A DNA stretch of 64,000 nt, taken from IMG/VR virus record IMGVR_UViG_3300032236_002285, positions 372,001 to 436,000 of that record. One strand, written 5' to 3'. Every line of letters starts with the position of its first letter. Position 1 is the first letter of the stretch. Under the pieces are notes generated by a model, which was given only the letters and a program-made list of their open reading frames with translations, did no database searches and had not been told where the DNA came from. The position numbers and the translations under genes were made by a program. Positions 1 through 42,767 of this stretch are shown here, in pieces.

Positions 1-107
1 GATCAAGTGGCTCATCAGGCTCTTCTGGATTAAATGGCACTTCAGGTTCAAGTGGCACTTCAGGTTCAAGCGGAACATCTGGATCAAGTGGTTCATCCGG
101 AACAAGC
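1..107 (+). repeat. 9-nt period coding repeat (GSS/GTS triplets)
   Basis: Repeating ggN-tcN/acN-agt/tcN units, e.g. ggcacttcaggttcaag twice in tandem. Confidence 0.85.
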
Positions 108-1286
108 TACAATGGAACATCAAACTATTTATATGCTACAAGAACTGTAACACAAACAATCGCTTCAGGTACTTGGTCTAATAGAGATATTATATTTAAT
201 ACTAAAAATACTGGTAGTGGTATAACTTATGCGACTGCTAGTGGTATTGCTTCTTTAACAGGTGGTAGAGTTTATAAAATAAATGCTGGTGTTTCTTGGA
301 ATATATTTGCTAGTAATTATGTATTACAAATTGGATTATATGATAGTTCTAATAACTTATTAAGTCCGGTATTTGAAAGTTTACCACCAACATCAACCAG
401 TAACAATGTATCTGAACAGATGCTTGATTTTATATATGCTCCTGTAAGTAATACTGATGTTAAAATTAGAACAACTGGTAATACTACAGCTTTGAGTGGT
501 GAAAATGTTAGAGGTGATGTTGCTACTTTCTTCTCTATTGTTGAAGTTGGTAATAACTCAGGTACAAGTGGTTTACTTTCATTAACTGGTGCGACAAATA
601 ATGGTTTAATTACATTAAATGGTTCAGCTCCTAATGGTACAGTTGAATCTAATCTAACATTTGATGGTACAACTTTAACAGTTACAGGTACGGTGAGTAC
701 TACAAATAACGCTACTTTTGGTGGTCAAATAACAATTGGTAAAACAACTGCTGCACTTAATGAAGGAGGTCAGATTGATTTAGCAACTGCACCAAGTGGT
801 GGTTTAACTGGTAGTACTGTTACTTTAGATATTTATGCTGATAAATTTAGAATATTTGAAGCTGGTGGTAATAATAGAGGTGTTAGTATTGACCTTAGTA
901 AGGCTCCTAATACTGTTGGTGGTGAATTGATGTGGAAAACTGGTGGTTATGTGAATGCGGGTTCGTATGTAACTTTAGATAACTTAAAAGCAACAGTAAC
1001 AACATCGGGTAATCGTGGGTTAAGTTTGGCTACTGTAGCAGGAACAGTTAGTAGTACAATAAGTGGTTCATATGCACTCTATGCTGGTGGTATCAGTGGT
1101 ACATCTAATGCTTTAACAATAACAACAACAGCAAGTAGTTCATTATTTAGTTGGAACTTTACTGGTCAAGGTGACACAGCAACATATATTATTAATGATA
1201 CGACAAATAGTAGAGTATATCGTATAATATTAATGATAGGTGGTAGTTATAATAATAACTTGATTACAATTGAAAGATTAGTTTAA
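3..1286 (+). CDS. Tail fibre/adhesin-like structural protein, 5'-truncated by the window, with Gly-X-X (GSS/GTS) repeats followed by G/T/S/N-rich beta domains
   Basis: The frame of ORF 420..1286 has no stop back to position 3 and reads SSGSSGSSGLNGTSGSSGTSGSSGTSGSSGSSGTS, so the real start lies upstream of the window. Confidence 0.7.
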   Translation, partial: SSGSSGSSGLNGTSGSSGTSGSSGTSGSSGSSGTSYNGTSNYLYATRTVTQTIASGTWSNRDIIFNTKNTGSGITYATASGIASLTGGRVYKINAGVSWNIFASNYVLQIGLYDSSNNLLSPVFESLPPTSTSNNVSEQMLDFIYAPVSNTDVKIRTTGNTTALSGENVRGDVATFFSIVEVGNNSGTSGLLSLTGATNNGLITLNGSAPNGTVESNLTFDGTTLTVTGTVSTTNNATFGGQITIGKTTAALNEGGQIDLATAPSGGLTGSTVTLDIYADKFRIFEAGGNNRGVSIDLSKAPNTVGGELMWKTGGYVNAGSYVTLDNLKATVTTSGNRGLSLATVAGTVSSTISGSYALYAGGISGTSNALTITTTASSSLFSWNFTGQGDTATYIINDTTNSRVYRIILMIGGSYNNNLITIERLV

Positions 1287-1292
1287 CATTTT

Positions 1293-1301
1293 TAATATAT
1301 A
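1293..1301 (+). promoter_or_regulatory. TAATATATA box, putative phage late promoter heading the tagged-protein array
   Basis: The same 9-mer recurs upstream of more than 10 genes in the window. Confidence 0.7.
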
Positions 1302-1323: not shown

Positions 1324-2088
1324 ATGAAATACTTAAAAAGATTTAACGAAGAACTTAAACCAAGTACATATATGTCTGCTGCTAAAAAGCTAACAGCAAT
1401 TGGTCATACAGGTAGAGCCAATGCTCTAAAAGATTGGGCGAATGAAACTGAAAAAAGAGAAGAGATGTCTAAGTGGAAGGATCGTTTACAAGACTATGGT
1501 CTTTTTGGTTCTTATAAGATGAATATTGTTAATCCAGAAACTGAAGAAAAATTTACAGGTGATTTTTACTTAGATATTAATTTTGATGAAATGGCATTTG
1601 AGGATAGCTTTGAATATGAGAAAGAAAATAATCCAGATAATATTAAAGGTGTTTCTATTTTATTTTTTATTGGTTTAATTCCAACATCTGAAGAAACACT
1701 TAGAAAATGTATGGAGATTATGCCTTGTGCAGAGTTTGGTAATGGTATGTTCTGGGGTATGAGTTGTGGTTTAGACTTACAAATTCTAAACGATAGATTA
1801 ACATTTACTAAATTCAGTTTAGATGATTATGATGATAACCTATCAGGTAATGTTTCTTTTGCTGATAGAGCTTCTGCTGGTAAATTCAAAACTTTATTAA
1901 AGAATATATTTAGTAATCCAGAATTAAACTATCCAAGTGGATATACAGATGTTGAATATATGTACCAAAAATTAGAACAAGTAGTTTGTATTAGACAATC
2001 ATTCTCATCTGATTATGGATTTGAATTAAAACAAGTGGCTGATTTTATTAATGCTCAGTCACCAAATACAATGTATAAAACTATTTAA
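1324..2088 (+). CDS. N-tagged hypothetical protein, paralog family A
   Basis: Starts MKYLKRFNEE. Shares SAAxKLxxxGH, G-x-FY, FxG, RxxAxxFK and a terminal YK with 2440 and 4675. Confidence 0.8.
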   Translation: MKYLKRFNEELKPSTYMSAAKKLTAIGHTGRANALKDWANETEKREEMSKWKDRLQDYGLFGSYKMNIVNPETEEKFTGDFYLDINFDEMAFEDSFEYEKENNPDNIKGVSILFFIGLIPTSEETLRKCMEIMPCAEFGNGMFWGMSCGLDLQILNDRLTFTKFSLDDYDDNLSGNVSFADRASAGKFKTLLKNIFSNPELNYPSGYTDVEYMYQKLEQVVCIRQSFSSDYGFELKQVADFINAQSPNTMYKTI

Positions 2089-2089
2089 T

Positions 2090-2440
2090 ATGAAACACTT
2101 AAAGAAATATGAAACCTTTAGTCCATATGATGATGAGCCACTAACAAGAGCGGAAGAAATCTTTGGAAAACAAACAAGATTAGAAAAACAATTTTCTGAA
2201 ATTATGATAGATGGTTTATCTAGCGACGATGTTGATGTTGCTCACTATTGGTCTACAATTAATGCTATTGTGGTAAATATAAAAGAAGATAAACTTCTTG
2301 ATGAAACATCAATTAAAGAATTACAACACAGAGTAGTAGAAGGTGAAAACCCAACAGAAGTTATAAATGATATTTGTTCAAGAATAAAAAAGCCTACTAG
2401 TGAAGTACAAAGACTATTAAAAAAACTAAATTCATTTTAA
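2090..2440 (+). CDS. N-tagged hypothetical protein
   Basis: Start moved to the internal Met (MKHLKKYETF) just after the upstream stop codon. Confidence 0.75.
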   Translation: MKHLKKYETFSPYDDEPLTRAEEIFGKQTRLEKQFSEIMIDGLSSDDVDVAHYWSTINAIVVNIKEDKLLDETSIKELQHRVVEGENPTEVINDICSRIKKPTSEVQRLLKKLNSF

Positions 2441-3261
2441 TGAAACATCTTAAAAGTATTAATGAATTAAAATCAAGCACTTTTAGAAATGCTGCTACTA
2501 AATTGAAGCAGTTAGGTCATATTAGAAGAAGTCAAGAAATTGAATCTCATGCTATTGATGTTGAGGAGAGAGAAGAAAAAGCAAGAATTGAACAAAGAAC
2601 TAAATGGTTAAAAGAACAAGCACCATTTAGATTACAATATTATAAAACAAAATATAACTCAGCCACTAAATCACATGAAAAGGATTTATTATGTGAAGGT
2701 AACTTTTATATAGAACCTTCTTTTGATGATGGTTGGTTCTCAGATTCAGGATATGATTATAGAGGTGAAGGTGGTAGATATAGTTTATTTATGTACTTTG
2801 AATTTGGTACTACTCCAGCTGATGTGGAAACTGCAAATACTTGGAAATCAATTGAATCTAAGTTATCAGAAGAAGCATATGATGGAATTTATTATGGTAC
2901 AAGATTAGGTATTGAAATTATACCAGAAGGTAATGCTTCAGTTGTTTCTAATGGTAAATGTTACTGGGAGTCAAGAGATAATGATATTTTTATCTTTGCT
3001 AATAGATCAGAAGCTATGAGATTTAAGAAACTTTTAATAGAAGCTCTTGAAGGTAAAATTGAATGGGGTAAAAACAAATGGAATGTGAAAGGTATTATAT
3101 CTTGTTTTGATAGATACTTTTTAAACGATGCTAATTATATACAAAGAAAAATAGATAAAGGTGAAACTCCTGAAGAACCTCTTTTTACAAAAGAAGATAT
3201 GCCTAAATTAATTAACACTCTTAAAACAGGGTTAAGTGTAAATCAATTATATAAAAACTAA
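2440..3261 (+). CDS. N-tagged hypothetical protein, paralog family A
   Basis: MKHLKSINELKSSTFRNAATKLKQLGH; TAATG start/stop coupling. Confidence 0.8.
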   Translation: MKHLKSINELKSSTFRNAATKLKQLGHIRRSQEIESHAIDVEEREEKARIEQRTKWLKEQAPFRLQYYKTKYNSATKSHEKDLLCEGNFYIEPSFDDGWFSDSGYDYRGEGGRYSLFMYFEFGTTPADVETANTWKSIESKLSEEAYDGIYYGTRLGIEIIPEGNASVVSNGKCYWESRDNDIFIFANRSEAMRFKKLLIEALEGKIEWGKNKWNVKGIISCFDRYFLNDANYIQRKIDKGETPEEPLFTKEDMPKLINTLKTGLSVNQLYKN

Positions 3262-4190
3262 TGAGATATTTAAAAACATATGAACTATTTGGATTTGGTT
3301 CTAAGAAATCAAAAACTTGGCAAGAAAAGTTCCAAGACATATACAATTGGTATTTAAAGAATAAAGATAAAAAAGATATCCGATCTATTGATTTACCACA
3401 TGCTGATGTTAAAGATGACTCTTTATCAATATCACAAGGTTTAGATAATCATTTGGTTTTCTATGGTAAAATAAAAGGTGGTAACAGACATATGGAATTA
3501 GTTGATTTCTCTGAAGCTGATTATGCTGATCCAAAATCAACAAAAGGTGTTTATCCAATCACTCAAGAAGTTTATGATGAGTATGAGAAAAAGATTCAAG
3601 AGATATCAGATTGGTTAGATGCTAGAAGTGAAAAAGAGTTTGGTAAGTCAGATAGTATTATTTCAGATGATGGTGAATTAAACTTAGATTTTGATGAAGC
3701 GGATTTAGCTTTAGAAGAAATAAATGATAAGATAAAATCTGAATTAGATATCATTGGTAAAGAATATGAATTTGAAATGTCTTACCATCTTTGGACATCT
3801 AAATCAACAAATGAATTAATAGTTGAAAGAATACAATTAGCTATTGATGACTTAAAATTTGGTTTTGGTGGTAATAGATTTTATTGTCAATTATTCACAA
3901 AAGATCCATTCGGTGAAAGAGCTGATATCTGGTTAGAGTCATATTCCTCTTCAGAGTATTATGACTTTGATGAACACAAGTGGCCTTATAGTGATGATAA
4001 AGATAAGATTATTAGAATGTCAACTATTAAAAAAGAGATGACTAGAAAAGAAGAAAGAGATTTTGAAAAGAATAGAAAATATCCTTATGCTTTTGCTTAT
4101 GATATTACACCTTGTAAATGGGAATCTATGGAGCTAGTAAAAGAGATTACTTCTCTATTACAACAAATGAATGATAGTATAAAGAAATGA
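3261..4190 (+). CDS. N-tagged hypothetical protein
   Basis: MRYLKTYELFGF; translationally coupled to neighbours. Confidence 0.8.
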   Translation: MRYLKTYELFGFGSKKSKTWQEKFQDIYNWYLKNKDKKDIRSIDLPHADVKDDSLSISQGLDNHLVFYGKIKGGNRHMELVDFSEADYADPKSTKGVYPITQEVYDEYEKKIQEISDWLDARSEKEFGKSDSIISDDGELNLDFDEADLALEEINDKIKSELDIIGKEYEFEMSYHLWTSKSTNELIVERIQLAIDDLKFGFGGNRFYCQLFTKDPFGERADIWLESYSSSEYYDFDEHKWPYSDDKDKIIRMSTIKKEMTRKEERDFEKNRKYPYAFAYDITPCKWESMELVKEITSLLQQMNDSIKK

Positions 4191-4678
4191 GATACTTAGA
4201 AAAATTCAAATCATTTGAAAATGTTTCTGTTATAAATTCATATATTCAAGATATAAATGATATTTTACTAGAATTAAGTGATTATAACTGGGTTATTCTA
4301 GTTGACTATGTTCCAAAAAGATGGGAAAATCCAAGTGCAAACTATACAATAAAATCCGACTACATCGGTGTAGTTATCAAAAAGAAGCAAAATAAATCAC
4401 AATCAAGATATCCAGAAGGATCTGAGTTCAAATTCTCTGATGTTTCTGATTATATACATAGAATAGTAGATTATTTTATGACAAATGACTATAGAATTAG
4501 GATTTGTGAATTAAATAATGCTTGGTACAATGGTATGCCAGGTCACTCAGAGAAAGGTATATGGTCTGATTGGACCGATTCAGAGATGCCTGAATTAGAT
4601 AAAAACATTTTGGGCATAGAAATTAATATATACTTACAAGGTGCTAACCTTGACGATTTTAAATATAAATTTAGATGA
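4187..4678 (+). CDS. N-tagged hypothetical protein, paralog family B
   Basis: MRYLEKFKSFE; DINDILLELSD helix resembles segments in 5454, 5864 and 6309. Confidence 0.75.
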   Translation: MRYLEKFKSFENVSVINSYIQDINDILLELSDYNWVILVDYVPKRWENPSANYTIKSDYIGVVIKKKQNKSQSRYPEGSEFKFSDVSDYIHRIVDYFMTNDYRIRICELNNAWYNGMPGHSEKGIWSDWTDSEMPELDKNILGIEINIYLQGANLDDFKYKFR

Positions 4679-5454
4679 GATACTTAAACAAATATAATGA
4701 AGAGTTGAAGTCAGATGTTTATAAATCTGCTGCTGATAAATTAACAAAATTAGGTCATATTAAAAGACCTGAAGAGTTAATGAAGTGGCATGAAATCACT
4801 AAGCAAAAAGAAATTGATGCTTCTAAATTAGCAACTCTTAAAGATTGTGAACAAATGGGTGTTTATCAACTTTCTCTTTCATATAGAAAAGGTGGTCAAG
4901 ATTTTAAGTATAAAGGTGATTTCTATATCAATCTTTCTTTTGACGGCTATAATTTAGATGAACAATACCCAGAGTGGAAAGAAGGTCAAGGTAATCTTTG
5001 GATTAGCTTTAGTTTTGGTGTTATACCTGTAGATGATGAAGGTAAAGAGTTTTGTAAGAATGTAGTAGAATCAATAATCGGATTGGGTGGTGATAAAATA
5101 ACTTATTGGTTAGGTGCTTTTTGGTTAAATATAAGTAAATCAATAGAAATAAATCCTTCTACAGGATTACCAGCAGAAGAATTGAAATTCGTACCAGAAA
5201 ATAAAAGTTACTTTGAAGAGTATGAAGGTAGTTGGCACTTAGATAATAGAGCATCTGCTATAAAATTCAAAAATACTTTATATCAAATATTTAGTGGTGA
5301 TATTATTATAAGAGAAACACCGAGTGTTCCAGGTGGAATGAAAGAGCAAATAATAGATGAACTTTGTAATAATAGAGGTCACGATATTGATGAGTTTGAA
5401 GCTATTATGAACTCTATTAAAGTTCTGAATATAAATAAATTGTATAAAGATTAA
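4675..5454 (+). CDS. N-tagged hypothetical protein, paralog family A
   Basis: MRYLNKYNEELKSDVYKSAADKLTKLGH. Confidence 0.8.
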   Translation: MRYLNKYNEELKSDVYKSAADKLTKLGHIKRPEELMKWHEITKQKEIDASKLATLKDCEQMGVYQLSLSYRKGGQDFKYKGDFYINLSFDGYNLDEQYPEWKEGQGNLWISFSFGVIPVDDEGKEFCKNVVESIIGLGGDKITYWLGAFWLNISKSIEINPSTGLPAEELKFVPENKSYFEEYEGSWHLDNRASAIKFKNTLYQIFSGDIIIRETPSVPGGMKEQIIDELCNNRGHDIDEFEAIMNSIKVLNINKLYKD

Positions 5455-5867
5455 TGAAACACTTAAAAACATTTGAATCACTATATGAACTACCGGTTAT
5501 TTTAGAGTTAAAAGATATGGCTCTTGAACTAACTGATATGTTTTTTAATGTTCAAATATTCAAGGATAATCCAAAACAAAAGAACTATAACGGCATCATA
5601 GATGTTGAATATGATGTTAGTGTTATAATTACATATGATAAAGGTTTGGGAATTTTTGGATATGGTAACTTTACAATGATAGATGACTTAAAAAGTTTCT
5701 TATTCAGAGCTATCGGTTATATGAAAGATAATGGCTATCAATTTGAAACTCATTCAAATATGGGTAGCTTACATTTTACTGATGATGGTAGAGTAATCAT
5801 TTCCAGCGGTGAAGCAAGAGCAAACTACCCATCATTCACAATGATAAATATATTATTTAAAAAATGA
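5454..5867 (+). CDS. N-tagged hypothetical protein, paralog family B
   Basis: MKHLKTFE; ELKDMALELTD. Confidence 0.75.
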   Translation: MKHLKTFESLYELPVILELKDMALELTDMFFNVQIFKDNPKQKNYNGIIDVEYDVSVIITYDKGLGIFGYGNFTMIDDLKSFLFRAIGYMKDNGYQFETHSNMGSLHFTDDGRVIISSGEARANYPSFTMINILFKK

Positions 5868-6331
5868 GATACTTAAAAACATATGAAGGTTTGTTTGATT
5901 TCTTTAAGAAAAAGAAATCTAATAATGAATATAATGACATGATGGATAAGCAATCATATCTTAAAATTCATTTAGAAGATGTAAAAGATTGTTTTATTGA
6001 TTTATGCTCTTATAATTCTTATGATCTAAAAGCATTTATTAGTGGTGGTGAAATACAAGTTAATATTTATCCACTTAAAGATAAATTTATGAAACTTGAA
6101 GATTTGATGGAAACTTTTAGATTTACTGACTCATATATAACCGACTTAGGATTGAAAATTATTAGATACGAATTGTATATTAGTGGTAAATATGATGGTA
6201 TCAATTATATGGGAGATATCTATTATGATAAAATTTGGGAATTGGAACAAGCCCTGGATGAAGAAGGAACTAAACACATAGAAAGTTTATTAATAAGAAT
6301 TAAAAAATATGAAATACTTAAAACGATTTAA
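5864..6331 (+). CDS. N-tagged hypothetical protein, paralog family B
   Basis: MRYLKTYEGLF; EDVKDCFIDL. Confidence 0.75.
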   Translation: MRYLKTYEGLFDFFKKKKSNNEYNDMMDKQSYLKIHLEDVKDCFIDLCSYNSYDLKAFISGGEIQVNIYPLKDKFMKLEDLMETFRFTDSYITDLGLKIIRYELYISGKYDGINYMGDIYYDKIWELEQALDEEGTKHIESLLIRIKKYEILKTI

Positions 6332-6677
6332 TGAATCATCCGACTTTAATCCTGAAGAAATAATGAAAGAATTAACTCTTGAATTATTAGATGCTGGTTT
6401 ACAAGTTAATATTTATTCTGGTCAGTATAAATATTCTAATCATCCAAAATTTGAAGGTGAGTTACATGTTGAGATAACAGATAATGATAAAGTGTTTTGT
6501 AAAAACTATCCTGAAGATGATATGGATTGGTTATATGGTAAACCTATTATTATGAATTTCTTTGATGAACTAACCGATTTTGGTTTAATAAGAGACAAAG
6601 ATTATAAAGTATATGGTGGTGGACTAGGAGTTAATTTAGTCTTCCAGAAAGGTGGACTTAAAAAAGTTAAACTATAA
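6309..6677 (+). CDS. N-tagged hypothetical protein, paralog family B
   Basis: MKYLKRFNE; EIMKELTLELLD. Confidence 0.75.
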   Translation: MKYLKRFNESSDFNPEEIMKELTLELLDAGLQVNIYSGQYKYSNHPKFEGELHVEITDNDKVFCKNYPEDDMDWLYGKPIIMNFFDELTDFGLIRDKDYKVYGGGLGVNLVFQKGGLKKVKL

Positions 6678-6701
6678 CCTGAAAATCTTTCAGGTTTTTT
6701 T
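6676..6701 (+). terminator. Rho-independent terminator
   Basis: Hairpin aacctgaaa-atc-tttcaggtt followed by a T-run. Confidence 0.75.
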
Positions 6702-6727
6702 ATTATCTTTGCTGAATATATAGGTAT

Positions 6728-7897
6728 ATGAAATTAAAAAGATATAATCAATTTTTAGAATCTAAATCTGATATGTGGGACATTATTCCACAATCAGTTA
6801 AAGAGTTACATGAATTATTTCAATCAGCTGGTAAGAAACTTTACTTAGTTGGTGGTTCAGTGCGTGACTTCTTAACTGGTGATAAGCCAAAAGATTTTGA
6901 CCTAGCAACTGACGCACTTCCGGATGAAGTATTAGAAATCGTTGGTGATCAATTTAGAACTAACCTTCAAGGTAAGGCATTTGGTGTAGTTGTTGTTTAC
7001 ACTAAAGAAGTTCCAGAAGGAATGGAGATTGCTACATTCAGACAAGATGTTAGTAAAGGTCGTAACCCAGAAGTTAAACTAGGTGTTACTATTGAAGATG
7101 ATGTTAAACGTAGAGATCTAACATACAACTCTCTTTTTTATGATTTAGATACAAGACAAATCGTTGACTTAGTTGGTGGTAAAGAAGATTTACAATCTGG
7201 TGTTACTAGAATGGTTGGTGATCCAATTGAAAGATTTGATGAAGATTCATTAAGAATTTTAAGAGCATTTAGATTTGCTTCAAGATACGAACATCCTTTA
7301 CATAAAGATACTGAGAAGGCAATTGAGAAAAGAAAACAACTTCAAAACATTGACCCAGAAACTGGTGAAATGAAAAGAATTTCTCAAGAAAGAGTTTGGG
7401 AAGAAATGAAGAAAGCTTGGAAACAAGCCAAAGATTATAGATACTATTTATCATTCTTTACTAAGTTTGATATGTGGGAAGAAGTATTTCCAGGTGCTAA
7501 CATCAATACTAACTTAGTTGATAGTAAAGATTTTGTAGTTGTTATTGCTAACTTATTTAAGAACGAAAGTCCTATTGGATTGGCTGACAAGTTGGCTCAA
7601 GAATATAAGATTGAATTAGAGTTGGCGACTAAAGTAGCTTTCTTAATTTCTTTATTAAATTTCAAAGTAGAAGATGTATTTGACATCTACAAGAAAAGAC
7701 AACAATGTGCTATCACTGATGCTACTATTTTAGAGTGGTTGAAAGTGGAAGGTATTGATACTAATGAACTAATTAAGTTTGTTGAATACAGACCAAGTGT
7801 ATCGGCTCAAGAACTAATGTCTCAAGGATTCAAGGGTAAAGAACTTGGAATTGAAATCAAAAGATTAGAGGTAGAAAAATTTAAACAAATGTTATGA
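6728..7897 (+). CDS. cca: CCA-adding tRNA nucleotidyltransferase (class II, PolyA_pol family) with N-terminal tag
   Basis: Motifs LYLVGGSVRD..KDFDLAT, EIATFR, RRDLTYNSL and EDSLRILRAFRF. N-terminus MKLKRYNQFLE. Confidence 0.9.
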   Translation: MKLKRYNQFLESKSDMWDIIPQSVKELHELFQSAGKKLYLVGGSVRDFLTGDKPKDFDLATDALPDEVLEIVGDQFRTNLQGKAFGVVVVYTKEVPEGMEIATFRQDVSKGRNPEVKLGVTIEDDVKRRDLTYNSLFYDLDTRQIVDLVGGKEDLQSGVTRMVGDPIERFDEDSLRILRAFRFASRYEHPLHKDTEKAIEKRKQLQNIDPETGEMKRISQERVWEEMKKAWKQAKDYRYYLSFFTKFDMWEEVFPGANINTNLVDSKDFVVVIANLFKNESPIGLADKLAQEYKIELELATKVAFLISLLNFKVEDVFDIYKKRQQCAITDATILEWLKVEGIDTNELIKFVEYRPSVSAQELMSQGFKGKELGIEIKRLEVEKFKQML

Positions 7898-8298
7898 AAA
7901 AATTCACAGAAAGTATTGAATCTATAAAAAAAGTACCATCAGAAACTTTAAAGTATTTTGACCTATTTCCTCTATTAAAAGGTTTAGAGTCAGAGAGACC
8001 TGGTATTAAAGAAAGAGTTTGGGAATGGATGTGTGATGAATGGGATGCTGCCTTTAAGCCATATAATGGTAGAATTTCAAGTATTAATTTATTTTTCTAT
8101 GGTATTGGTGATGAATATCCGAATGATTATTTGAATCAATATCCTGATGAACTTGAACATTGTAAAAAGATACACCCTGAAGCTTTTGTAGAAGGTTCAA
8201 AGGAAAAAGAACTAAGATTAGATTTGAATCTAATCTGGTCAGTATATGAAGAAGAGATTGAAGATCCAGAATCTTTTAGTGTAAAGGTTTTTTGGTAA
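7894..8298 (+). CDS. Hypothetical protein with a weak N-tag (MKKFTE)
   Basis: ATGA overlap with cca. Confidence 0.7.
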   Translation: MKKFTESIESIKKVPSETLKYFDLFPLLKGLESERPGIKERVWEWMCDEWDAAFKPYNGRISSINLFFYGIGDEYPNDYLNQYPDELEHCKKIHPEAFVEGSKEKELRLDLNLIWSVYEEEIEDPESFSVKVFW

Positions 8299-8315
8299 AA
8301 AAAAATTATAAATTA

Positions 8316-9289
8316 ATGAGACATTTAAAAACATTCAAACTATTTGAAGAAGCGGTTCCGAAACCGTTAAAAAAGTTTCCTACAGAACCGGCTGTTCATT
8401 GGAATTATCTAATGAAAGTTCTAGAAGATGCTGGTATTAACCCACATGATGGTTTAGTGAAAGGACAGAGAGATACTTATTTTCAGGACTTTTTGCTAAA
8501 TGTGCTAGTAGAGATAATGTTGTTTTCCCTAATATGTTAGACATTGAAGGTTGGTCTAAAGAAGGTCAAAGTGATGCTAGATATAAGAATTTTATCTTTG
8601 GTGAATCTGTGTTTCTTTTACCAATAAGCTACGATGGTTCTAATGATGCGGTAGAAGCAGTTCAAAAGAAAAAGAGCTTTCTTGATAATATGAGAGATTT
8701 CGCCAGACAAATGGGTAAATCTAAAGCAGAGGAAGATAAGTTTGTTCAAGATGCTGAGAAACATACACATTTTGGACCAAGTGGATACGACTGGGCTAAC
8801 CCAGCACTTAAAGTTATTCATGATAAATTAGGACAATATTACAGGAATGATAAATTAAGAGTTTGGTTCCCTAAAGATAGAGATTATGATCCTTGGGAAG
8901 GTATGGACTATCCACATAAATATAATGTAGTTGGTGATTTAGATAGACCAAATGGTGTTTATTTCCTTTCTGATATTGAGAAGTTTATTGATGATAAATA
9001 TGGTATTAAAGATGAACTATTCTATAAGTTTATTATTGATAATCAATATATTGAAGGTCGTTATTGGGAAAGAGTTTGGTCTCTTTCAACTGAAGATGAA
9101 AATGGGAAAGATACTGGAAATAAACTTCAGAAATCCAACTTTGGTCAATATGGAATGGAACCAACTGAAAACATTCTTGATATGTTGAATATCATAGAGC
9201 ATGAGTTTGGTGATGAAATTCAATCAACTGATTATGAAGGATTCCCAATCTATGTAGATTATTACAAAAAAGTAGAACCAAAATATTAA
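8316..9289 (+). pseudogene. N-tagged gene split by a 1-nt frameshift in the T5 run at 8490-8494 (assembly error, pseudogene or slippage)
   Basis: The MRHLKTFKLFEE frame stops at 8540, while the downstream frame is open from 8450. One extra T gives a continuous ...YFQDFFAKCASRDNVVFPNMLDIEG... Confidence 0.6.
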
Positions 9290-9290
9290 T

Positions 9291-9755
9291 ATGACTTATT
9301 ACTTAACATACTTAAAAGACACAATTGGCAACAATTATGTAGGAATTAATATTCCTGAAGCTATTGTTGAACCACATTTAGAAAAACTAAAAGAGATTTT
9401 AGGTGAAGAAGATTTTCAAATCTTTACACAAAATCAAAAGATGAGAGACCACGGTCACTATCATATCACCGTTATTAATGTAATGGATTGTAACCGCCTT
9501 TCAAAAGAAATGGGTATGGCTAACTTTGTTAAGTCAGTTGAACTTGCTTTTGAGTACCCAGTAGAAGATTTAGAAATGTTAGGTGTTGGTAAAGCTTCTA
9601 AGAACGATAATACGGCTTACTTTATAGTTTGTTCATCTGATAGTTTAGATGCTGTTAGAACTCGTTTTAACCTACCTAAACAAGACTTCCACGTTACTTT
9701 GGGATTCAATGCTAAGGATGTATTTGGTGTTCCAAAAAATGAGGTAATATTTTAA
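9291..9755 (+). CDS. 2H phosphoesterase family protein
   Basis: Two HxT motifs (YHITV, FHVTLG) about 75 aa apart. Confidence 0.8.
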   Translation: MTYYLTYLKDTIGNNYVGINIPEAIVEPHLEKLKEILGEEDFQIFTQNQKMRDHGHYHITVINVMDCNRLSKEMGMANFVKSVELAFEYPVEDLEMLGVGKASKNDNTAYFIVCSSDSLDAVRTRFNLPKQDFHVTLGFNAKDVFGVPKNEVIF

Positions 9756-9806
9756 AACTTTTCTTCTTTTAAAGAATAAGAAAAAATAAAAATAATAAAT
9801 TAAAAT

Positions 9807-10085
9807 ATGGAATTGTATAACTATTATAGCCTTGATGAATGTCCAGAAAGAAAGGTTATTAAAAAAAGACTAACACAACTTCAAGATGAAGGTAGAATTG
9901 AATTTGAAATAGATGGTGATGTTCTTAAATTAACTGATTTGGATTTAGATGAAAATGAAGTTGCTGAATTAATTGAAATGTTTGATAAATATGATGCTTT
10001 TCCTTATCCAGATTATGAAGAAGGATTGGATGATGAAGAAGAGGATGACGACTACTACGATAATTACGATGAAGATGATTATTAA
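9807..10085 (+). CDS. Small, highly acidic protein
   Basis: D/E/Y-rich C-terminal tail. Confidence 0.7.
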   Translation: MELYNYYSLDECPERKVIKKRLTQLQDEGRIEFEIDGDVLKLTDLDLDENEVAELIEMFDKYDAFPYPDYEEGLDDEEEDDDYYDNYDEDDY

Positions 10086-10097
10086 TACTTAATAAAA

Positions 10098-10682
10098 ATG
10101 ATTAAAATAGGAATTACGGGAGAAATGGGAAGCGGGAAAACCTTCTGTTCTAAGATATTTGAACAATTGGGAGTTCCTGTTTTTTATTCTGATGATATTT
10201 CAAAGTCTATAGTAAATACAAACAAAGCTTTGAAGCAAGAACTAACTCAAGAGTTTGGTAATATTTATGATGAAAATTCAATGATAGTTCCAAAACTACT
10301 AAGAGATATTGTATTTGTTAAAGGTGGTGAGCAAAAGCTAAAAATGTTGAATAAAATAATTCATCCTTATGTATTTAATGAATTTGAATTGTTCTGTAAT
10401 AAAAACTCTAGCAGTCCTTATATTATTGCTGAAACCGCACTTCTTTATGAAAGTAACATGAGAAGATATGTTGATAAAGTTATTTATGTTTGTGTAGAAG
10501 AGCAAACAAGAATCCAAAGAACATTCAAAAGAAGTGGTTATTCTGAACAAGAATATAAAGAAAGAATGAAATATCAGATTAATCCAGAAACAAAGAAAAA
10601 ACTATCAAATTTCATTATTTATAATAATGATGGTGATGATGTTAATAAACAAATTTTAGAAATACATAATACTTTAAAATAA
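10098..10682 (+). CDS. coaE: Dephospho-CoA kinase
   Basis: IGITGEMGSGKT Walker A; LNKIIHPYV, ETALLYE, IIYNN. Confidence 0.9.
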   Translation: MIKIGITGEMGSGKTFCSKIFEQLGVPVFYSDDISKSIVNTNKALKQELTQEFGNIYDENSMIVPKLLRDIVFVKGGEQKLKMLNKIIHPYVFNEFELFCNKNSSSPYIIAETALLYESNMRRYVDKVIYVCVEEQTRIQRTFKRSGYSEQEYKERMKYQINPETKKKLSNFIIYNNDGDDVNKQILEIHNTLK

Positions 10683-10724: not shown

Positions 10725-11786
10725 CTATCCAAATATATATCTAAATAGTAGGAATAATCCACCAGACATTACAATAGTGACAGGTAATGTTAATAACCAA
10801 GCAGATAATATAGTTTTGATTGTGTTTGTTTTTAAGTTAGTAACACCTTTGGAAGCCACCATTGAGCCAGCAATACCTGAACTTAAAATATGAGTTGTTG
10901 AAACTGGTAATTTAAACCAAGTAGATAAACCAATTGTTATAGCACCAACCAATTCAGCGGAAGCTCCTTGAGCATATGTTAGATGTGTTTTACCAATTTT
11001 CTCACCAATTGTAACAACAATTCTTTTCCAACCAATCATTGTTCCAAGACCAAGTGAAGCAGCAACCATCCACATAACCCAAGTTGGTGGGTGTGAAATC
11101 GTATCTAATGTATAAGCCGCAGGTAAGAAAGCCATTAGAATAATCATCACCAAGCCTATTCCTTTTTGTCCATCATTTCTACCGTGAAAGAATGATACTA
11201 AAGATGATGTTGTGAATAAAGTGGCTCTAATCCAAAACGGAGGTGGATTAACACCATCCGGTTCTTCAAATACATCTTTTCTTTTAACTACTTTTCTCAA
11301 GAACCACATTAGGAAGATAACTAAGCTGAAACCTAAAAGTGGTGATAAAACTAATGCTTTACCTATATCAATTGCTTTACCCCAATTAACTACATCAATA
11401 CCAGAATATAATGAGTAACCAACACCAACACCAAGTATTGAACCTATAAGAGTGTGAGATGATGAGGCGGGAATACCTTTATACCATGTGATTAGATTCC
11501 AGAAGATAGCAGTTGTGAGTAGAGCTGTAACCATCTGAATAACATGAGATGTGTTAGCATCTGTTAAAATTTCCTTTGGTATAAGACCAACGATTGCCAT
11601 TGTAACACCAACGCCACCAGTTATCAGACCTAGAAAGTTCATAAGACCTGACCAAACAACGGCTGTTGTTGGTTTAAGAGATTTTGTATAAATTACCGTT
11701 GCTACGGCATTTGCTGTGTCGTGAAATCCATTAACGAATTCATAAGCACAGGCTAATAATAGAAATAATACTAATAAGAATGTCAT
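10725..11786 (-). CDS. pit: Inorganic phosphate transporter, PiT family
   Basis: NGFHDTANAVAT, GIPASSSHTLIG, HGRNDGQK, LPVSTTH; many transmembrane segments. Confidence 0.92.
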   Translation of the reverse strand: MTFLLVLFLLLACAYEFVNGFHDTANAVATVIYTKSLKPTTAVVWSGLMNFLGLITGGVGVTMAIVGLIPKEILTDANTSHVIQMVTALLTTAIFWNLITWYKGIPASSSHTLIGSILGVGVGYSLYSGIDVVNWGKAIDIGKALVLSPLLGFSLVIFLMWFLRKVVKRKDVFEEPDGVNPPPFWIRATLFTTSSLVSFFHGRNDGQKGIGLVMIILMAFLPAAYTLDTISHPPTWVMWMVAASLGLGTMIGWKRIVVTIGEKIGKTHLTYAQGASAELVGAITIGLSTWFKLPVSTTHILSSGIAGSMVASKGVTNLKTNTIKTILSAWLLTLPVTIVMSGGLFLLFRYIFG

Positions 11787-11798
11787 AATTTATTGTTT

Positions 11799-12638
11799 TT
11801 ATTTTTTAGTGAAAATTTTATTAAAGTTTTCAAATATAATGTATGCTTGTAAGATATTATTTTTTTCTAAATAATCAATAGTACCATATCTATTAGCATA
11901 TTGTAGACCATAACCTAACTCGAATCTCATAGGAACAGACATTTTTGGTTTATAACCTAATAAACAGAATGTTCTATTTTGGTCCCAAATTTTATTATCA
12001 GCTACATTCTTACCAACTGAGATAAACATCTCATTCCAAGTAGTTATATAAAATGTATTATCTTCTAACTTTTTATGATTTAGAGGAACAATTGCTCTTA
12101 CAAAATATCTAATTCTTCCTTTTTGAGCACTTGGTAAGTAATCATCACCTAATGAATATCCTAAACCCGTAGATGTATTATCAACCTTGTTACCCATAAA
12201 TCTATATTCAAATCTATACCTTTGATCAATAATAACTCTACCGATCTTATTACTTAATGTTACTTGAGGACATATTCTAAACTCTGGTTGGATCTTTGGC
12301 TTTCCACCACCTTCTAAAGAAGATGTATAAGTTTCCCAGAATCCAATAGGAGAAAGAGAAAATCTAACATTATCATTTAATTGATAATGAACCCATGGTC
12401 TATAAACATGTTGATATGGGTTCTCAAATATGTTTTTTGAAGTAGATAGATTACTTGGATCAGAACATCTGCGATATTGATAATCTAATTGCCACTTCCA
12501 TTTGTTTTTGATACTACCATTGATAACCGTCTCTGTCCAAAAAGAGTAACGATTAAATGATTGTCTTGTACTTTGTGCGTTTGATGCTATTGAAATTAAC
12601 AATAAAGCAACAACTAATAGTTTTTTCATTTTTTTCAT
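11799..12638 (-). CDS. DUF2490-like outer-membrane beta-barrel protein
   Basis: Signal peptide MKKLLVVALLLISIASNAQ; DYQYRR, RYRFEYRF, NEMFI, WDQNR and ELGY strand motifs. Confidence 0.75.
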   Translation of the reverse strand: MKKMKKLLVVALLLISIASNAQSTRQSFNRYSFWTETVINGSIKNKWKWQLDYQYRRCSDPSNLSTSKNIFENPYQHVYRPWVHYQLNDNVRFSLSPIGFWETYTSSLEGGGKPKIQPEFRICPQVTLSNKIGRVIIDQRYRFEYRFMGNKVDNTSTGLGYSLGDDYLPSAQKGRIRYFVRAIVPLNHKKLEDNTFYITTWNEMFISVGKNVADNKIWDQNRTFCLLGYKPKMSVPMRFELGYGLQYANRYGTIDYLEKNNILQAYIIFENFNKIFTKK

Positions 12639-23425: not shown

Positions 23426-23770
23426 ATGAAACTTGATATCAATGAAATTTACCACAATTATATTGTGAGAGTTGTAGTATTTGCTCTCTTTACTTTTAAG
23501 AGACAGATAAGACAACCTAATATTTATAAGATGTCTGTTATAGCTTTTACTATTAAAAGATTGCCTTGGAAAATTAATTTAGTAATTGATACAGGATTAA
23601 AACTAGATAAAGAAGATGAAAGAGAAATACTACTTAATGAAATATTAGAAGGTATTGAAACAGATTATTTATCAACCGTTACCGTTACATTTATCACACC
23701 ACTAAAAGAAGTTACTATGAGTGTGGATTTAAGTGATGAAGAAAAATACGAACACTATCTTTATTCTTAA
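23426..23770 (+). CDS. Hypothetical protein with an internal C-tag-like helix
   Basis: TAATATATA at 23411-23419; internal EREILLNEIL. Confidence 0.65.
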   Translation: MKLDINEIYHNYIVRVVVFALFTFKRQIRQPNIYKMSVIAFTIKRLPWKINLVIDTGLKLDKEDEREILLNEILEGIETDYLSTVTVTFITPLKEVTMSVDLSDEEKYEHYLYS

Positions 23771-25008
23771 TACTCAAAATTAACTTCAGCTCTTCTGTAG
23801 TTTAAGTCAAATGAACTAAATCCAAAGATATCACAGATTCTTTGAAATTTATCCTCACAACTTTCTTCAGATGGTAGTTGACCATCATAAGCATAAGAGC
23901 TAAATTCTATTTTAGTTTCTGAGTCGCCTATTTTTAGACTATCTACTCTGAATCCTAATTTTTCAATTTCATATTTTAAATCAACTTCGTCGGGTAATTC
24001 AAAGTTATCATGTTGAATACTTGGTCTACTGAATTCAAAAAATATATTAAATACTTTATTAACTTCAAAACCAGATAAAGTCCAACCATCATCTCCTAAT
24101 CTACCTACTGCAGATTGCATATTTTCTAATATAACCATTAAGTTATTATAAGTGGCATCTTTAGGTGAATAAACAATACTGAACTTACTAACGGTTTTAT
24201 TTTTAGATACAAGAACTGGTTTGAAATTTTGATATCTTATATTTTTTTCAAGATAATCTGAGTATGTCATATTACCGGTAGAAGACTTGAAGGTAATCTT
24301 TTCACCTTCATCAATAAAGTCCAACATAGTATCAACTATCTTATCAACTTCATTGTGTGTATCAGTTGATTCTTTGATAAAAGAAACATATTTATCAACC
24401 TTTCTTTTCTTTAATTTACCATTATCAAACTTATAGTATTTATACTTACCATCTTTATTAAGAACCACATAAAAAGAATCGGGTTTAATATATTTTAGAT
24501 AAGACTTTGTTGTTTGTAATTGAGTTGAGTAAACATAATCAATATAATCTTCATCTGCTTTATGACCACCCATCTCACCTCTTGTTAGGTTTTGCTTTTT
24601 AGCTGTTGACAAATCAATTAAAATAAGAATAAAAATAACATTATAACCATACTTGTGAGCATCCTTAGTAATCTCAAAAATGTTTTTATCATTTGATCCG
24701 GTTGTATCGTAGATAAAGTTTTGACCGGTTCTTAAATATGATTTTAGATGTGTAATATTTAATTCTGATGCGCCTTGATGATATTTAGATTTATCTTTAC
24801 TAAGTATATATGAAACATCATCGGTTGAAAACTTTCTAATATTAGAATTATAAGGCAAGATATTGTTATTAGCAAATGTAGATTTACCAGAGCCTGGAAT
24901 GCCAAGTAAAACTATACCTAGCTTTTCCTTTTGTCTAATATCGGGTATAGGATCATTCTTTGACCACTCTTCATTTATAAACCCTTCAAAATTGTTAATA
25001 ACTCTCAT
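23767..25008 (-). CDS. N-tagged P-loop kinase (zeta-toxin/AAA_33-like) fused to a second module
   Basis: GIPGSGKST, FIYDTTGS; an internal tag-like KYVSFIKES precedes the C-terminal module. Confidence 0.75.
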   Translation of the reverse strand: MRVINNFEGFINEEWSKNDPIPDIRQKEKLGIVLLGIPGSGKSTFANNNILPYNSNIRKFSTDDVSYILSKDKSKYHQGASELNITHLKSYLRTGQNFIYDTTGSNDKNIFEITKDAHKYGYNVIFILILIDLSTAKKQNLTRGEMGGHKADEDYIDYVYSTQLQTTKSYLKYIKPDSFYVVLNKDGKYKYYKFDNGKLKKRKVDKYVSFIKESTDTHNEVDKIVDTMLDFIDEGEKITFKSSTGNMTYSDYLEKNIRYQNFKPVLVSKNKTVSKFSIVYSPKDATYNNLMVILENMQSAVGRLGDDGWTLSGFEVNKVFNIFFEFSRPSIQHDNFELPDEVDLKYEIEKLGFRVDSLKIGDSETKIEFSSYAYDGQLPSEESCEDKFQRICDIFGFSSFDLNYRRAEVNFEY

Positions 25009-42236: not shown

Positions 42237-42767
42237 TTATTTACAAGATTTTATAATAGAAGAAATCTCAGCTTTAATTTTACCTAACTCTTCATATCCT
42301 AATTCTTTAGGGAATTTATTACCTACTTTCTTAACACCAACATAGTCAGCTCTAAACATTACTTGACCAACGTGTTCATCACAACAATGAATCTCCAAGT
42401 CATCACCTACTTGTTTAGTTTTACAATCTTTATTTGATTCAATAATATCTTTGATTTTCTTTCTGAAAGAATCTCTCTTATCAGCTTTAACTTCTTTATG
42501 TTTATCTTTAGTTCTTACTGACTTCTCAGCAACACCTTCACCTAACCAACTTGGTTTGCCCATACCATCTTGCCAACCACCTTTTGAGTCAGAGTCATCA
42601 TATCTTTCATCATCTCTTGGATACATTCCATCTGGATCTTCTTTCTGAGATCTTTTTATTCTTTTTTCTCTTTTCTCAGCATCCTCTTTAGCTTTGTGTG
42701 GAAAATTAGAGATAGCTGTTTTTTCTGCTGGAGATAACTCCTCATTAAATCTCTTTAAGTATTTCAT
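42237..42767 (-). CDS. N-tagged charged protein
   Basis: MKYLKRFNEEL. Confidence 0.75.
   Translation of the reverse strand: MKYLKRFNEELSPAEKTAISNFPHKAKEDAEKREKRIKRSQKEDPDGMYPRDDERYDDSDSKGGWQDGMGKPSWLGEGVAEKSVRTKDKHKEVKADKRDSFRKKIKDIIESNKDCKTKQVGDDLEIHCCDEHVGQVMFRADYVGVKKVGNKFPKELGYEELGKIKAEISSIIKSCK

What the first reader, a model, noticed from the sequence alone, without database searches (positions are those of the whole stretch)
1324..6677. Array of nine tagged genes built from two interleaved paralog families
Seen: nine tightly packed genes between one TAATATATA box and one terminator. Family A (1324, 2440, 4675; 254-273 aa) shares ELKxxxxxxAAxKLxxxGH, G-x-FY, FxG and RxxAxxFK. Family B (4187, 5454, 5864, 6309) shares a K/N-D/E-xxx-E/D-L helix followed by beta strands. 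The first 24 nt of 3261 and 5864 differ at only one position, and 1324, 6309 and 42767 all begin AATATGAAATACTTAAA. Inference: a diversifying payload locus analogous to the hypervariable T4 IPI locus, where the conserved tag DNA could seed recombination and swap cargo.
Basis: partly seen in the sequence, partly recalled or inferred. Interest (0 to 1): 0.7.

Follow-up and report, generated by a model that had tools for sequence, protein, structure and literature searches.

The report
Tag-bounded gene cassettes in huge phage
A 476-kb freshwater phage carries nine back-to-back genes that all start with the same short protein tag, which resembles the address label phage T4 uses to load proteins into its head; close relatives differ by whole genes gained or lost at those tags, and about 57 genes across the genome carry the tag.

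Summary
Nine abutting + strand genes (1324-6677) lie between a TAATATATA box (1293) and a hairpin terminator (6676-6696). All begin M-[KR]-[HY]-L-[KNE]-x-[FYI].

Family A (1324, 2440, 4675) is a true paralog family: about 26% identity with the tag removed. Family B is not demonstrable homology; its members share only a helix motif and a small alpha/beta architecture.

The tag is not special to this locus. About 57 genes across the 476-kb genome carry it, including a CCA-adding enzyme, and so do related huge phages. It is kept at the protein level, decays when a fusion makes it internal, and is disordered in AlphaFold models.

Four near relatives carry different combinations of the accessory cassettes g2, g4+B1, B2 and B3+B4, while A1-A2-A3 stay constant. 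All internal breakpoints fall at or inside tag DNA.

The phage has a T4-type head module: a gp23-like capsid protein and a gp21-like protease fused to a scaffold full of [LI]-A-E sites. The tag fits the T4 capsid-targeting-sequence pattern. My best reading (confidence about 0.5) is a variable locus of head-packaged, co-injected proteins. Packaging and cleavage are inferred, not shown.

The parts
1293..1301 (+). TAATATATA promoter-like box, 23 nt upstream of the first ATG
   Evidence: Exact match. Genome-wide, 116 of 143 copies lie within 60 nt upstream of a gene start. The same T[AT]ATATATA box with 20-30 nt spacing precedes the portal, capsid, protease-scaffold, tail-sheath and fibre genes.
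1324..2088 (+). A1: family A paralog, 254 aa, tag MKYLKRFNE
   Evidence: BLASTP with the tag trimmed. 325 homologues found; the 120 listed are 69-100% identical. AF2 model pLDDT 90 with tag residues 2-8 below 50. No known fold.
2090..2440 (+). g2: accessory cassette, 116 aa, tag MKHLKKYETF
   Evidence: Present in L050 and L051, absent in L049 and in the X3 contig. No Pfam or PHROG family.
2440..3261 (+). A2: family A paralog, 273 aa, degenerate tag MKHLKSINELK
   Evidence: Relatives have the canonical MKYLKRFNEELK here.
3261..4190 (+). g4: accessory cassette, 309 aa, acidic (pI 4.9), tag MRYLKTYELF
   Evidence: Present with B1 in L049. Absent in L050, the X3 contig and X6, with the joint 3260->4675 sharing 8 nt.
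4187..4678 (+). B1: accessory small alpha/beta protein, 163 aa, tag MRYLEKFKSFE
   Evidence: Travels with g4. Weak link to the tagged genes at genome 248659 and 249144. Atlas neighbours are only unnamed viral clusters.
4675..5454 (+). A3: family A paralog, 259 aa, tag MRYLNKYNE
   Evidence: In relatives it is fused behind a tagged B-like N-terminal domain and has lost its own MKYLK.
5454..5867 (+). B2: accessory cassette, 137 aa, tag MKHLKTFES
   Evidence: Present in L050 (69% identity), absent in L049 and the X3 contig. The joint 5460->5871 lies inside 12 nt shared by the B2 and B3 tags.
5864..6331 (+). B3: accessory cassette, 155 aa, tag MRYLKTYEG
   Evidence: Present with B4 in the X3 contig, absent in L049 and L050.
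6309..6677 (+). B4: accessory cassette, 122 aa, tag MKYLKRFNES
   Evidence: 58 homologues whose N-termini switch between the short and long tag forms and nearly all end in E-S. AF2 pLDDT 80 with tag residues 1-10 largely below 50. Generic alpha/beta sandwich, Z <= 6.6.
6676..6703 (+). Intrinsic terminator-like hairpin and T-run closing the array
   Evidence: In L049 and L050 a terminator directly follows whichever gene is last.
6728..7897 (+). tRNA CCA-adding enzyme with tag variant MKLKRYNQFLES; conserved right anchor of the locus
   Evidence: PF01743 E 3e-30, phrog_2244 E 4e-59. The tag is kept in all orthologues, including GTG-start versions. Its Ser is encoded by both TCN and AGT.
8316..8540 (+). 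d2: small tagged gene (MRHLKTFKLFEE) within a second indel block, d1-d3 (7894-9289)
   Evidence: The block is absent in L049 and L050.
42237..42767 (-). Distant tagged gene sharing MKYLKRFNEEL and the 17-nt start-region DNA with A1 and B4
   Evidence: No Pfam family.
23767..25008 (-). Tagged (MRVINNFEGF) AAA_33 / zeta-toxin-like kinase, an example of a tagged enzyme elsewhere in the window
   Evidence: PF13671 E 3e-7, PF06414 E 7e-6.

Best explanation
The nine genes form one transcription unit in a huge T4-related phage of freshwater, probably infecting Bacteroidota. A conserved core of family A paralogs (A1, A2, A3) is interspersed with accessory gene cassettes (g2, g4+B1, B2, B3+B4).

Every gene starts with an 8-12 residue tag: M-[KR]-[HY]-[LI]-K-x-[FY]-x(1-3)-[F]-E-[S]. 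I propose that this tag works like the T4 capsid-targeting sequence. It binds the scaffold core of the assembling prohead, so the protein is enclosed. The gp21-like prohead protease then cuts it off after the Glu. The cargo stays in the head and enters the next host together with the DNA.

Because every cassette begins with 20-36 nt of nearly the same tag-coding DNA, recombination between tags can delete, insert or reshuffle whole in-frame genes without scars. This gives the combinatorial variation seen among relatives.

Shown: the array, family A, the genome-wide and clade-wide tag, protein-level selection on the tag, cassette presence/absence with breakpoints at tags, and the T4-type head module.

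Inferred: binding to the scaffold, cleavage, packaging, injection, the role of the cargo, and that recombination (rather than selection for intact genes alone) places the breakpoints at tags.
For: 1. Tag abundance. 57 genes on both strands carry the tag. The strict DNA pattern has 36 hits against 0 for the control. Related genomes give 58 hits (LR745206), 28, 12 and 16 in IMG/VR relatives, and 14 in LR756500, with controls of 0-1.

2. Protein-level selection. Orthologues differ at synonymous sites. K/R, H/Y, L/I and F/Y swaps occur, as do indels of 1-3 residues. Ser is encoded by TCN and by AGT, and GTG-start versions exist.

3. The tag must be N-terminal. In long A3 forms of relatives, a tagged domain is fused in front. 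The now-internal MKYLK is lost while the adjacent NEELK..TY..AA.KL...GH is kept.

4. The tag is not part of the fold. pLDDT is below 50 for A1 residues 2-8 and for B4 residues 1-3 and 5-10, in otherwise confident models.

5. The tag is modular. It sits on unrelated proteins: a CCA-adding enzyme, an AAA_33 kinase, a DeoC aldolase, and OmpA-like and Toprim-like proteins.

6. T4-type head module.
- gp23-like capsid protein, E 6e-27.
- gp21-like domain, E 1e-5, fused to a scaffold with about 13 repeats of YSEY[LI]AENLDKNI, which are [LI]-x-E sites. Its N-terminus reads LIIE-8.
- The PTm1 gene in the same position, just upstream of the capsid gene, is annotated 'prohead core scaffolding protein and protease'.

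7. Fit to the T4 CTS, MKTYQEFIAE. In T4, residues 4 and 7 target, residues 8 and 10 direct processing, and gp21 cuts after L/I-x-E. The pattern M-[KR]-x-hydrophobic-x-x-[FYW]-x(1-4)-E fits the T4 CTS. It also fits 36 of 51 tagged N-termini, 3 of 554 other N-termini and 1 of 2354 internal Met sites. [LIVMF]-x-E ends at residues 8-14 in 70% of tagged and 20% of untagged proteins. E-S occurs there in 43% against 5%.

8. Promoter. The array's box has the form and spacing of those before the portal, capsid, sheath and fibre genes.

9. Cassette variation.
- Window: A1 g2 A2 g4 B1 A3 B2 B3 B4.
- L049: A1 A2 g4 B1 A3.
- L050: A0 A1 g2 A2 A3 B2.
- X3 contig: A1 A2 A3 B3 B4.
- Joints lie at 2105->2479, 3260->4675 and 5460->5871.

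10. Precedent. Giant-phage heads hold about 50 proteins, and paralogous ejection proteins share identical N-terminal propeptides.
Against: - No proteomic or biochemical data exist for this phage.
- The gp21 Pfam hit is below the curated cut-off (22.9 against 27 bits).
- Only 43% of tags have a canonical [LI]-x-E. The family A tags end in F-N-E.
- The cargo is acidic (pI 4.8-6.5), unlike the highly basic T4 IPs.
- Tagged proteins include a metabolic aldolase, an unexpected capsid cargo.
- Tagged genes occur behind both spacing classes of the promoter box, so no single timing class is shown.
- Tag codons show some nucleotide-level bias. ACA makes up 19 of 20 Thr codons, TTA 33 of 42 Leu codons, and codon 3 ends in C more often than expected. 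This leaves room for an mRNA-level role.
- Three of five indel junctions lack a tag on one or both sides, and no hybrid tag was seen.
- The complex prediction gave no answer.
Confidence: 0.5

Rival explanations
1. The tag is a real protein-level N-terminal signal, but for something other than head packaging. Candidates are binding to a phage chaperone or translocase, targeting to the membrane or an assembly site through a short amphipathic helix, or controlled degradation. The array is then a variable set of co-regulated accessory proteins that stay in the producing cell.
For: The evidence for protein-level selection, N-terminal dependence, disorder and modularity applies equally. L4, F/Y7 and F10 fall on one helical face. 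Tagged enzymes such as the DeoC aldolase and the CCA-adding enzyme have obvious cytoplasmic roles. The cargo is acidic.
Against: This does not explain the near-universal Glu (55 of 56 tags have E at residues 8-13) or the enriched hydrophobic-x-E and E-S endings. These match the cleavage logic of T4-type prohead proteases. It also does not explain the fit to the T4 CTS pattern. The acidic residues in the tag argue against binding to anionic membranes (inference).
Confidence: 0.22
2. The conserved element acts mainly at the mRNA or DNA level. It could be a translation-initiation enhancer for a host that uses little Shine-Dalgarno pairing, an operator for a RegA-like translational repressor, or simply a recombination linker. 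The peptide would then be a by-product.
For: Codon choice in the tag is more uniform than genome-wide usage: ACA 95% against 44%, TTA 79% against 56%, and codon 3 ending in C 51% against about 30%. Many genes with a box only 3-8 nt from the ATG, which may be leaderless, have tag-like starts. Tag DNA matches between unrelated genes at 87-97% over 30-46 nt.
Against: Orthologues vary at synonymous sites while keeping the residues. Ser is encoded by two unrelated codon families. Conservative replacements and indels preserve the hydrophobic spacing rather than the bases. Eight of the nine array genes are internal to the operon, with overlapping stop and start codons. A-rich codons in general would serve translation equally well, yet positions 4, 7 and 10 are restricted to L/I, F/Y and F.
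Confidence: 0.1
3. The tag is a relic of common descent. All tagged genes are paralogs of one ancestor that have diverged beyond recognition except at the start, and the tag has no function of its own.
For: Family A and several small tagged proteins are demonstrably paralogous. B1, B2 and B3 share nearest neighbours in language-model space.
Against: The tag sits on a CCA-adding enzyme, a kinase, an aldolase, and OmpA-like and Toprim-like domains of unrelated folds. It is the best-conserved part of otherwise unalignable proteins. It is lost when internal. Both observations indicate selection on the tag itself.
Confidence: 0.05

Closest known systems
[quoted passage not shown]
   Same: Both have a short N-terminal tag shared by otherwise unrelated proteins. 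The pattern is M-K-x-hydrophobic-x-x-aromatic ... E, in a phage with a gp23-type capsid and a gp21-type protease. In T-even phages the internal proteins are described as a highly diverse set with only the CTS conserved. Foreign proteins can be packaged through the tag alone.
   Different: There is no sequence homology to T4 IPs. Here about 57 genes (about 10% of genes) are tagged, against a handful in T4, and enzymes are among them. The cargo is acidic rather than basic. Tags end in F-E-S or F-N-E more often than in a canonical L/I-x-E. The protease is fused to the scaffold. Packaging is untested.
PeSL (promoter-early stem-loop) cassettes that mediate modular shuffling in T4-type phages (PMC2839356)
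   Same: A short conserved sequence repeated at the boundaries of small ORFan genes. Gene-precise insertions and deletions occur between close relatives. T4-type recombination needs less than 50 bp of homology.
   Different: PeSLs are roughly 100-bp intergenic promoter-plus-terminator units. Here the repeated element is the first 20-36 nt of the coding sequence, genes overlap with no intergenic space, and the whole array shares one promoter box and one terminator. Mini-circles were not looked for.
Ejection and inner-body protein paralogs of phiKZ-like giant phages (for example SPN3US gp53/gp54)
   Same: Paralogous head-internal proteins whose N-terminal propeptides are conserved while the rest diverges, with cleavage after Glu by a gp21-related protease. 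The heads hold about 50 protein species.
   Different: Those propeptides are mostly longer than 100 residues and are cut at A/S-x-E. The phage lineage is different, and no genome-wide short tag has been reported there.

Membership tests
T4-type CTS-tagged internal (head-packaged) proteins | N-terminal 10-20 residue tag with the targeting residues at positions 4 and 7 | tested here: met
   L/I at position 4 and F/Y at position 7 (partly by construction of the search pattern). Independent support comes from the B4 orthologue alignment and from positional 3-mer enrichment over all 605 ORFs.
T4-type CTS-tagged internal (head-packaged) proteins | Tag ends in a prohead-protease site, L/I-x-E | tested here: inconclusive
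   55 of 56 tags have Glu at residues 8-13. [LI]-x-E is present in 43% and [LIVMF]-x-E in 70%, against 13% and 20% of untagged proteins. Family A tags end in F-N-E.
T4-type CTS-tagged internal (head-packaged) proteins | Phage encodes a gp21-type prohead protease, a scaffold core and a gp23-type capsid protein | tested here: met
   PF07068 E 6e-27. PF03420 E 1e-5, below the cut-off. The scaffold repeats carry [LI]-A-E. The PTm1 gene in the same position, just upstream of the capsid gene, is annotated as scaffold plus protease.
T4-type CTS-tagged internal (head-packaged) proteins | Protein is physically present in the mature head with the tag removed | not testable with these tools
   No proteomics and no RNA runs. 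The complex prediction gave no answer.
T4-type CTS-tagged internal (head-packaged) proteins | Sequence homology to IPI, IPII, IPIII or Alt | tested here: not met
   No Pfam or PHROG family for any of the nine proteins. No structural match.
T4-type CTS-tagged internal (head-packaged) proteins | Highly basic cargo, as described for T4 IPI-III | tested here: not met
   pI 4.8-6.5 for all nine. 75% of tagged proteins have pI below 6.
Hypervariable payload locus (T4 IPI-locus type) | Gene content differs among relatives between conserved flanks while the tag is kept | tested here: met
   0-9 genes lie between the 84-aa gene or fibre gene and the CCA-enzyme gene. Four close variants carry different cassette combinations.
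PeSL-type mobile regulatory cassettes | Each cassette is flanked by an intergenic promoter plus stem-loop element | tested here: not met
   The genes abut or overlap. There is one upstream box and one terminator for the whole array.
Paralog family A | Significant similarity outside the tag, with a shared motif set | tested here: met
   (E 3e-13 to 1e-8, tag trimmed). (invariant N8, E10, L11, A19 and R182).
Paralog family B | Significant similarity outside the tag among the genes at 4187, 5454, 5864 and 6309 | tested here: not met
   phmmer and iterated HMM searches find none. hhalign probability is below 1%. Only shared neighbours in embedding space and a similar small alpha/beta architecture were seen.

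The most novel reading that the evidence does not exclude
A clade of huge freshwater phages puts a T4-CTS-like address tag on about a tenth of its genes, including RNA-repair enzymes such as a CCA-adding enzyme. It thereby loads a large arsenal of proteins into the capsid for co-injection. The tag's coding DNA doubles as the recombination linker, which makes this an integron-like cassette system for injected proteins.
Probability: 0.35. Interest if true: 0.85.

Novelty: new variant of a known kind. Interest (0 to 1): 0.7.

Why it matters
If the tag is a capsid-targeting signal, it gives a sequence-only way to list the injected proteome of uncultured huge phages. That would be roughly 57 candidates here and about as many in LR745206. 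It would also point to the genes most likely to act in the first seconds of infection: anti-defence, host takeover and tRNA repair. In addition, it would show a way of shuffling genes in which the conserved coding start of each gene serves as the linker. The tag could be tested as a tool for packaging cargo. I found no description of this tag in the literature I could search.

Tried and rejected
- Complex prediction of the protease domain (residues 1-215) with B4 gave no answer. The score was 0.00 and the controls were not run. This is not evidence either way.
- Fold searches of A1 against PDB (Foldseek and VIA wide), AFDB clusters and the Atlas gave nothing above background. Only the N-terminal helical hairpin matched, at Z about 6.
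- B4 matched only generic alpha/beta sandwiches, Z <= 6.6.
- Pfam and PHROGs gave nothing for the nine proteins.
- Close-relative scans of IMG/VR for B1-B4 found no relatives. B4 does have 58 homologues in the large protein collection.
- I first thought the CCA-enzyme tag was lost in L039 and L040. Rejected: it is present with a GTG start.
- I looked for a hybrid tag in L049 A2 as a crossover footprint. Rejected: L050, which keeps g2, has the same A2 tag.
- I tried to separate promoter timing classes (TAATATATA against TTATATATA, near against far spacing). Tagged genes occur in both, so no timing inference was possible.
- Literature searches for the tag strings returned only irrelevant matches.
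- No RNA runs hold the locus.
- The tag is absent in its strict form from Tenacibaculum phage PTm1, Lak-B5, PAU and the 735-kb LR756501. LR756501 has a looser variant.

Full report
**What the sequence is.** The window is bases 372,001-436,000 of a single 476,236-bp viral contig with 29.9% G+C. CheckV estimates it 97% complete. Its major capsid protein is T4 gp23-like (PF07068, E 6e-27). That protein is 69% identical to those of the 634-kb and 642-kb 'uncultured phage' genomes LR745206 and LR756502. It is 52% identical to that of the 735-kb genome LR756501, and about 29% to those of the Prevotella Lak phages and Tenacibaculum phage PTm1. Reads and contigs that hold the locus come from freshwater, aquatic and pond metagenomes. 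This is a huge T4-related phage, probably of a Bacteroidota host.

**The observation.**
- Nine + strand genes start at 1324, 2090, 2440, 3261, 4187, 4675, 5454, 5864 and 6309. They abut or overlap.
- A TAATATATA box sits at 1293, 23 nt before the first ATG. A hairpin plus T-run at 6676-6696 closes the array.
- A second exact copy of the box lies inside the array at 4624.
- None of the nine proteins matches a Pfam or PHROG family.

**Family A is real; family B is not shown.**
- With the first 14 residues removed, the proteins at 1324, 2440 and 4675 still match each other at about 26% identity over about 195 residues, E 3e-13 to 1e-8.
- A1 has 325 homologues in public metagenomes; the 120 listed are 69-100% identical to it. 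It is a conserved gene, not a hypervariable one.
- Its AlphaFold model is confident (pLDDT 90, pTM 0.83) but matches no known fold.
- For the four 'B' genes, phmmer, iterated HMM searches and hhalign find no significant similarity once the tag is removed.
- They share a helix-strand motif after the tag (...L.D...EL.D.G..V...).
- The B4 model and the Atlas models suggest a small alpha/beta sandwich architecture. B1, B2 and B3 also share nearest unnamed viral clusters in embedding space.
- B is therefore at most a structural class.

**The tag is genome-wide and clade-wide.**
- 57 ORFs on both strands over the whole genome begin M-[KR]-[HY]-[LI]-K-x-[FY]-[EKN]-x-F-E-S.
- A strict DNA pattern finds 36 copies against 0 for the reversed control.
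- The protein pattern fits only 1 of 2354 internal Met sites.
- Tagged proteins with recognisable domains include the tRNA CCA-adding enzyme just downstream of the array (6728-7897). The others are an AAA_33/zeta-like kinase, a DeoC aldolase, an OmpA-like protein and a Toprim-like protein.
- The strict pattern occurs 58 times in LR745206. It occurs 28, 12 and 16 times in three IMG/VR relatives and 14 times in LR756500.
- It does not occur in PTm1, Lak-B5, PAU or LR756501. LR756501 has a looser variant, M-x-[KN]-L-[KN]-x-[FY]-K-x-F.

**The tag is a protein-level, N-terminal, detachable element.**
- Orthologous tags differ at synonymous sites while keeping the residues. Replacements are conservative: K/R, H/Y, L/I/V, F/Y/W.
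- Indels of 1-3 residues interconvert a short form (MKYLKRFNES) and a long form (MKYLKSYKLFES) within one orthologous family.
- The closing Ser is encoded by TCN and by AGT. Two CCA-enzyme orthologues keep the tag behind a GTG start.
- In relatives, a tagged B-like domain is fused in front of A3. There the now-internal MKYLK has decayed, while the adjacent family A motif NEELK..TY..AA.KL...GH is intact.
- In both AlphaFold models the tag has pLDDT below 50.
- Some nucleotide-level bias exists in tag codons: ACA, TTA and a C-ending codon 3. An additional mRNA-level role is therefore not excluded.

**The locus varies by whole cassettes, with breakpoints at tags.** In more distant relatives, 0 to 6 genes lie between the same flanks, usually A0-A1-A2-A3 plus different extras. 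Four close variants carry the following genes:

| Variant | Gene order |
|---|---|
| Window | A1 g2 A2 g4 B1 A3 B2 B3 B4 |
| L049 (A1 95% identical) | A1 A2 g4 B1 A3 |
| L050 (A1 83% identical) | A0 A1 g2 A2 A3 B2 |
| X3 contig (same study; A2-B4 blocks about 97% identical at DNA level) | A1 A2 A3 B3 B4 |

- g2 and g4+B1 occur in all four presence/absence combinations. This needs recombination or repeated events.
- The internal joints lie at 2105->2479, 3260->4675 (8 nt shared) and 5460->5871 (12 nt shared). All are at or inside tag-coding DNA.
- Tags of unrelated genes match at 87-97% over 30-46 nt.
- T4-type recombination is reported to need less than 50 bp of homology.

Three caveats apply. 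The right ends of the B2-B4 and B3-B4 indels lie at the stop codon next to the terminator. The separate d1-d3 block (7894-9289) is bounded only by ATGA. No hybrid tag was found. Selection for intact genes could therefore also place breakpoints at starts.

**Link to head assembly.**
- Directly upstream of the capsid gene is a 720-aa protein. Its N-terminal part weakly matches the T4 prohead protease gp21 (PF03420, E 1e-5, below the cut-off).
- Its middle part is a coiled-coil scaffold with about 13 repeats of YSEY[LI]AENLDKNI, each an [LI]-x-E site. It begins MKPVLIIE.
- The PTm1 gene in the same position is annotated 'prohead core scaffolding protein and protease'.
- In T4, the CTS is the first 10 residues, MKTYQEFIAE.
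- Residues 4 and 7 of the CTS direct targeting to the scaffold core, and residues 8 and 10 direct processing. gp21 cuts after L/I-x-E, and foreign proteins are packaged through the tag alone.
- The tag here has L/I at position 4, F/Y at position 7 and a Glu at residues 8-13 in 55 of 56 cases.
- Hydrophobic-x-E and E-S endings are enriched in tagged proteins.
- A pattern that fits the T4 CTS fits 71% of tagged N-termini and 0.5% of the others.
- The array's promoter-like box has the same form and spacing as those before the portal, capsid, protease-scaffold, tail-sheath and fibre genes. This is compatible with synthesis while heads assemble. However, tagged genes elsewhere also sit behind the other spacing class.

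**Best explanation and rivals.**
- Most likely (about 0.5), the tag is a CTS-like address and propeptide. Family A proteins would be conserved head-internal proteins, and the interspersed cassettes variable co-injected cargo. Tag DNA would favour scar-free cassette exchange.
- Rival 1 (0.22): a protein-level signal with another purpose.
- Rival 2 (0.10): an mRNA or DNA-level element.
- Rival 3 (0.05): a relic of common descent.
- Against the best explanation:
  - the cargo is acidic;
  - many tags end in a non-canonical site;
  - one tagged protein is an aldolase;
  - there is no direct evidence of packaging.

**Comparison with what is known.**
- It works like the T4 internal-protein/CTS system and resembles its diverse internal-protein sets. 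It is not homologous to the T4 IPs and differs in scale, cargo type and charge.
- The cassette behaviour resembles PeSL-mediated shuffling, but the repeated element is coding.
- Conserved N-terminal propeptides on paralogous ejection proteins are known in phiKZ-like phages, but those are long.
- I found no paper describing this tag.
- I class it as a new variant of a known kind.

Noticed in passing
window 6728-10682: An RNA-repair-like gene set lies next to the array. It holds the tagged CCA-adding enzyme (PF01743), a 2H phosphoesterase of the 'Swiss Army Knife' type (PF22547, 9291-9755) and a CoaE-like kinase (10098-10682). L050 also has a HAD_SAK_2 gene nearby.
   Followed up: partly
window 10725-12638 (- strand): Host-like phosphate-uptake genes in the phage: a PHO4/PiT-type phosphate transporter and a DUF2490 protein with a signal-peptide-like N-terminus. 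L050 adds a phosphate-selective porin, Porin_O_P.
   Followed up: no
whole genome G000; for example window 23319(-), 25022(-) against 1293(+): The T[AT]ATATATA box sits at two sharply separate distances from the ATG: 3-8 nt and 20-30 nt. The short class would give leaderless or nearly leaderless mRNAs.
   Followed up: partly
genome 245,912-249,536 (loci L014 and L015), outside the window: A second array of six consecutive tagged genes. Some are weakly related to B1 and B4. Similar clusters of tags occur in relatives, for example G001 310.7-317.3 kb.
   Followed up: partly
genome 59,876-62,038 (L005:2876-5038): Protease-scaffold fusion of 720 aa. It has about 13 tandem 13-residue repeats (YSEY[LI]AENLDKNI) and a His/Glu/Asp-rich segment with two CGPM motifs.
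   Followed up: partly
L035:7703-8893, L037:8188-9465, L038:8713-9984: In relatives, A3 is fused behind a 140-165 residue tagged domain that looks like the small 'B' proteins. This is a natural fusion that internalises one tag, and that tag decays.
   Followed up: yes
window 2440-2475: The A2 tag of this genome is degenerate: MKHLKSINELK, with Ile at position 7 and one codon missing. L049, L050, L051 and the X3 contig have MKYLKRFNEELK.
   Followed up: partly
window 1-1286 (genome 369,363-373,286): A 1307-aa fibre-like protein with collagen-type G-x-y repeats lies directly upstream of the array. In several relatives a fourth family A gene (A0) occupies this position instead.
   Followed up: no
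genome 65,967-66,404 (L005:8967-9404): A very acidic 145-aa protein with a tag variant (MKLKKFNQLFE) sits in the head-gene cluster just after the capsid gene. It is a candidate prohead core protein.
   Followed up: no
window 6309-6331: The last 23 nt of B3 are read from the tag DNA of B4 in another frame (…KKYEILKTI*). The X3 variant has a 1-nt insertion at 6301, just before it.
   Followed up: no
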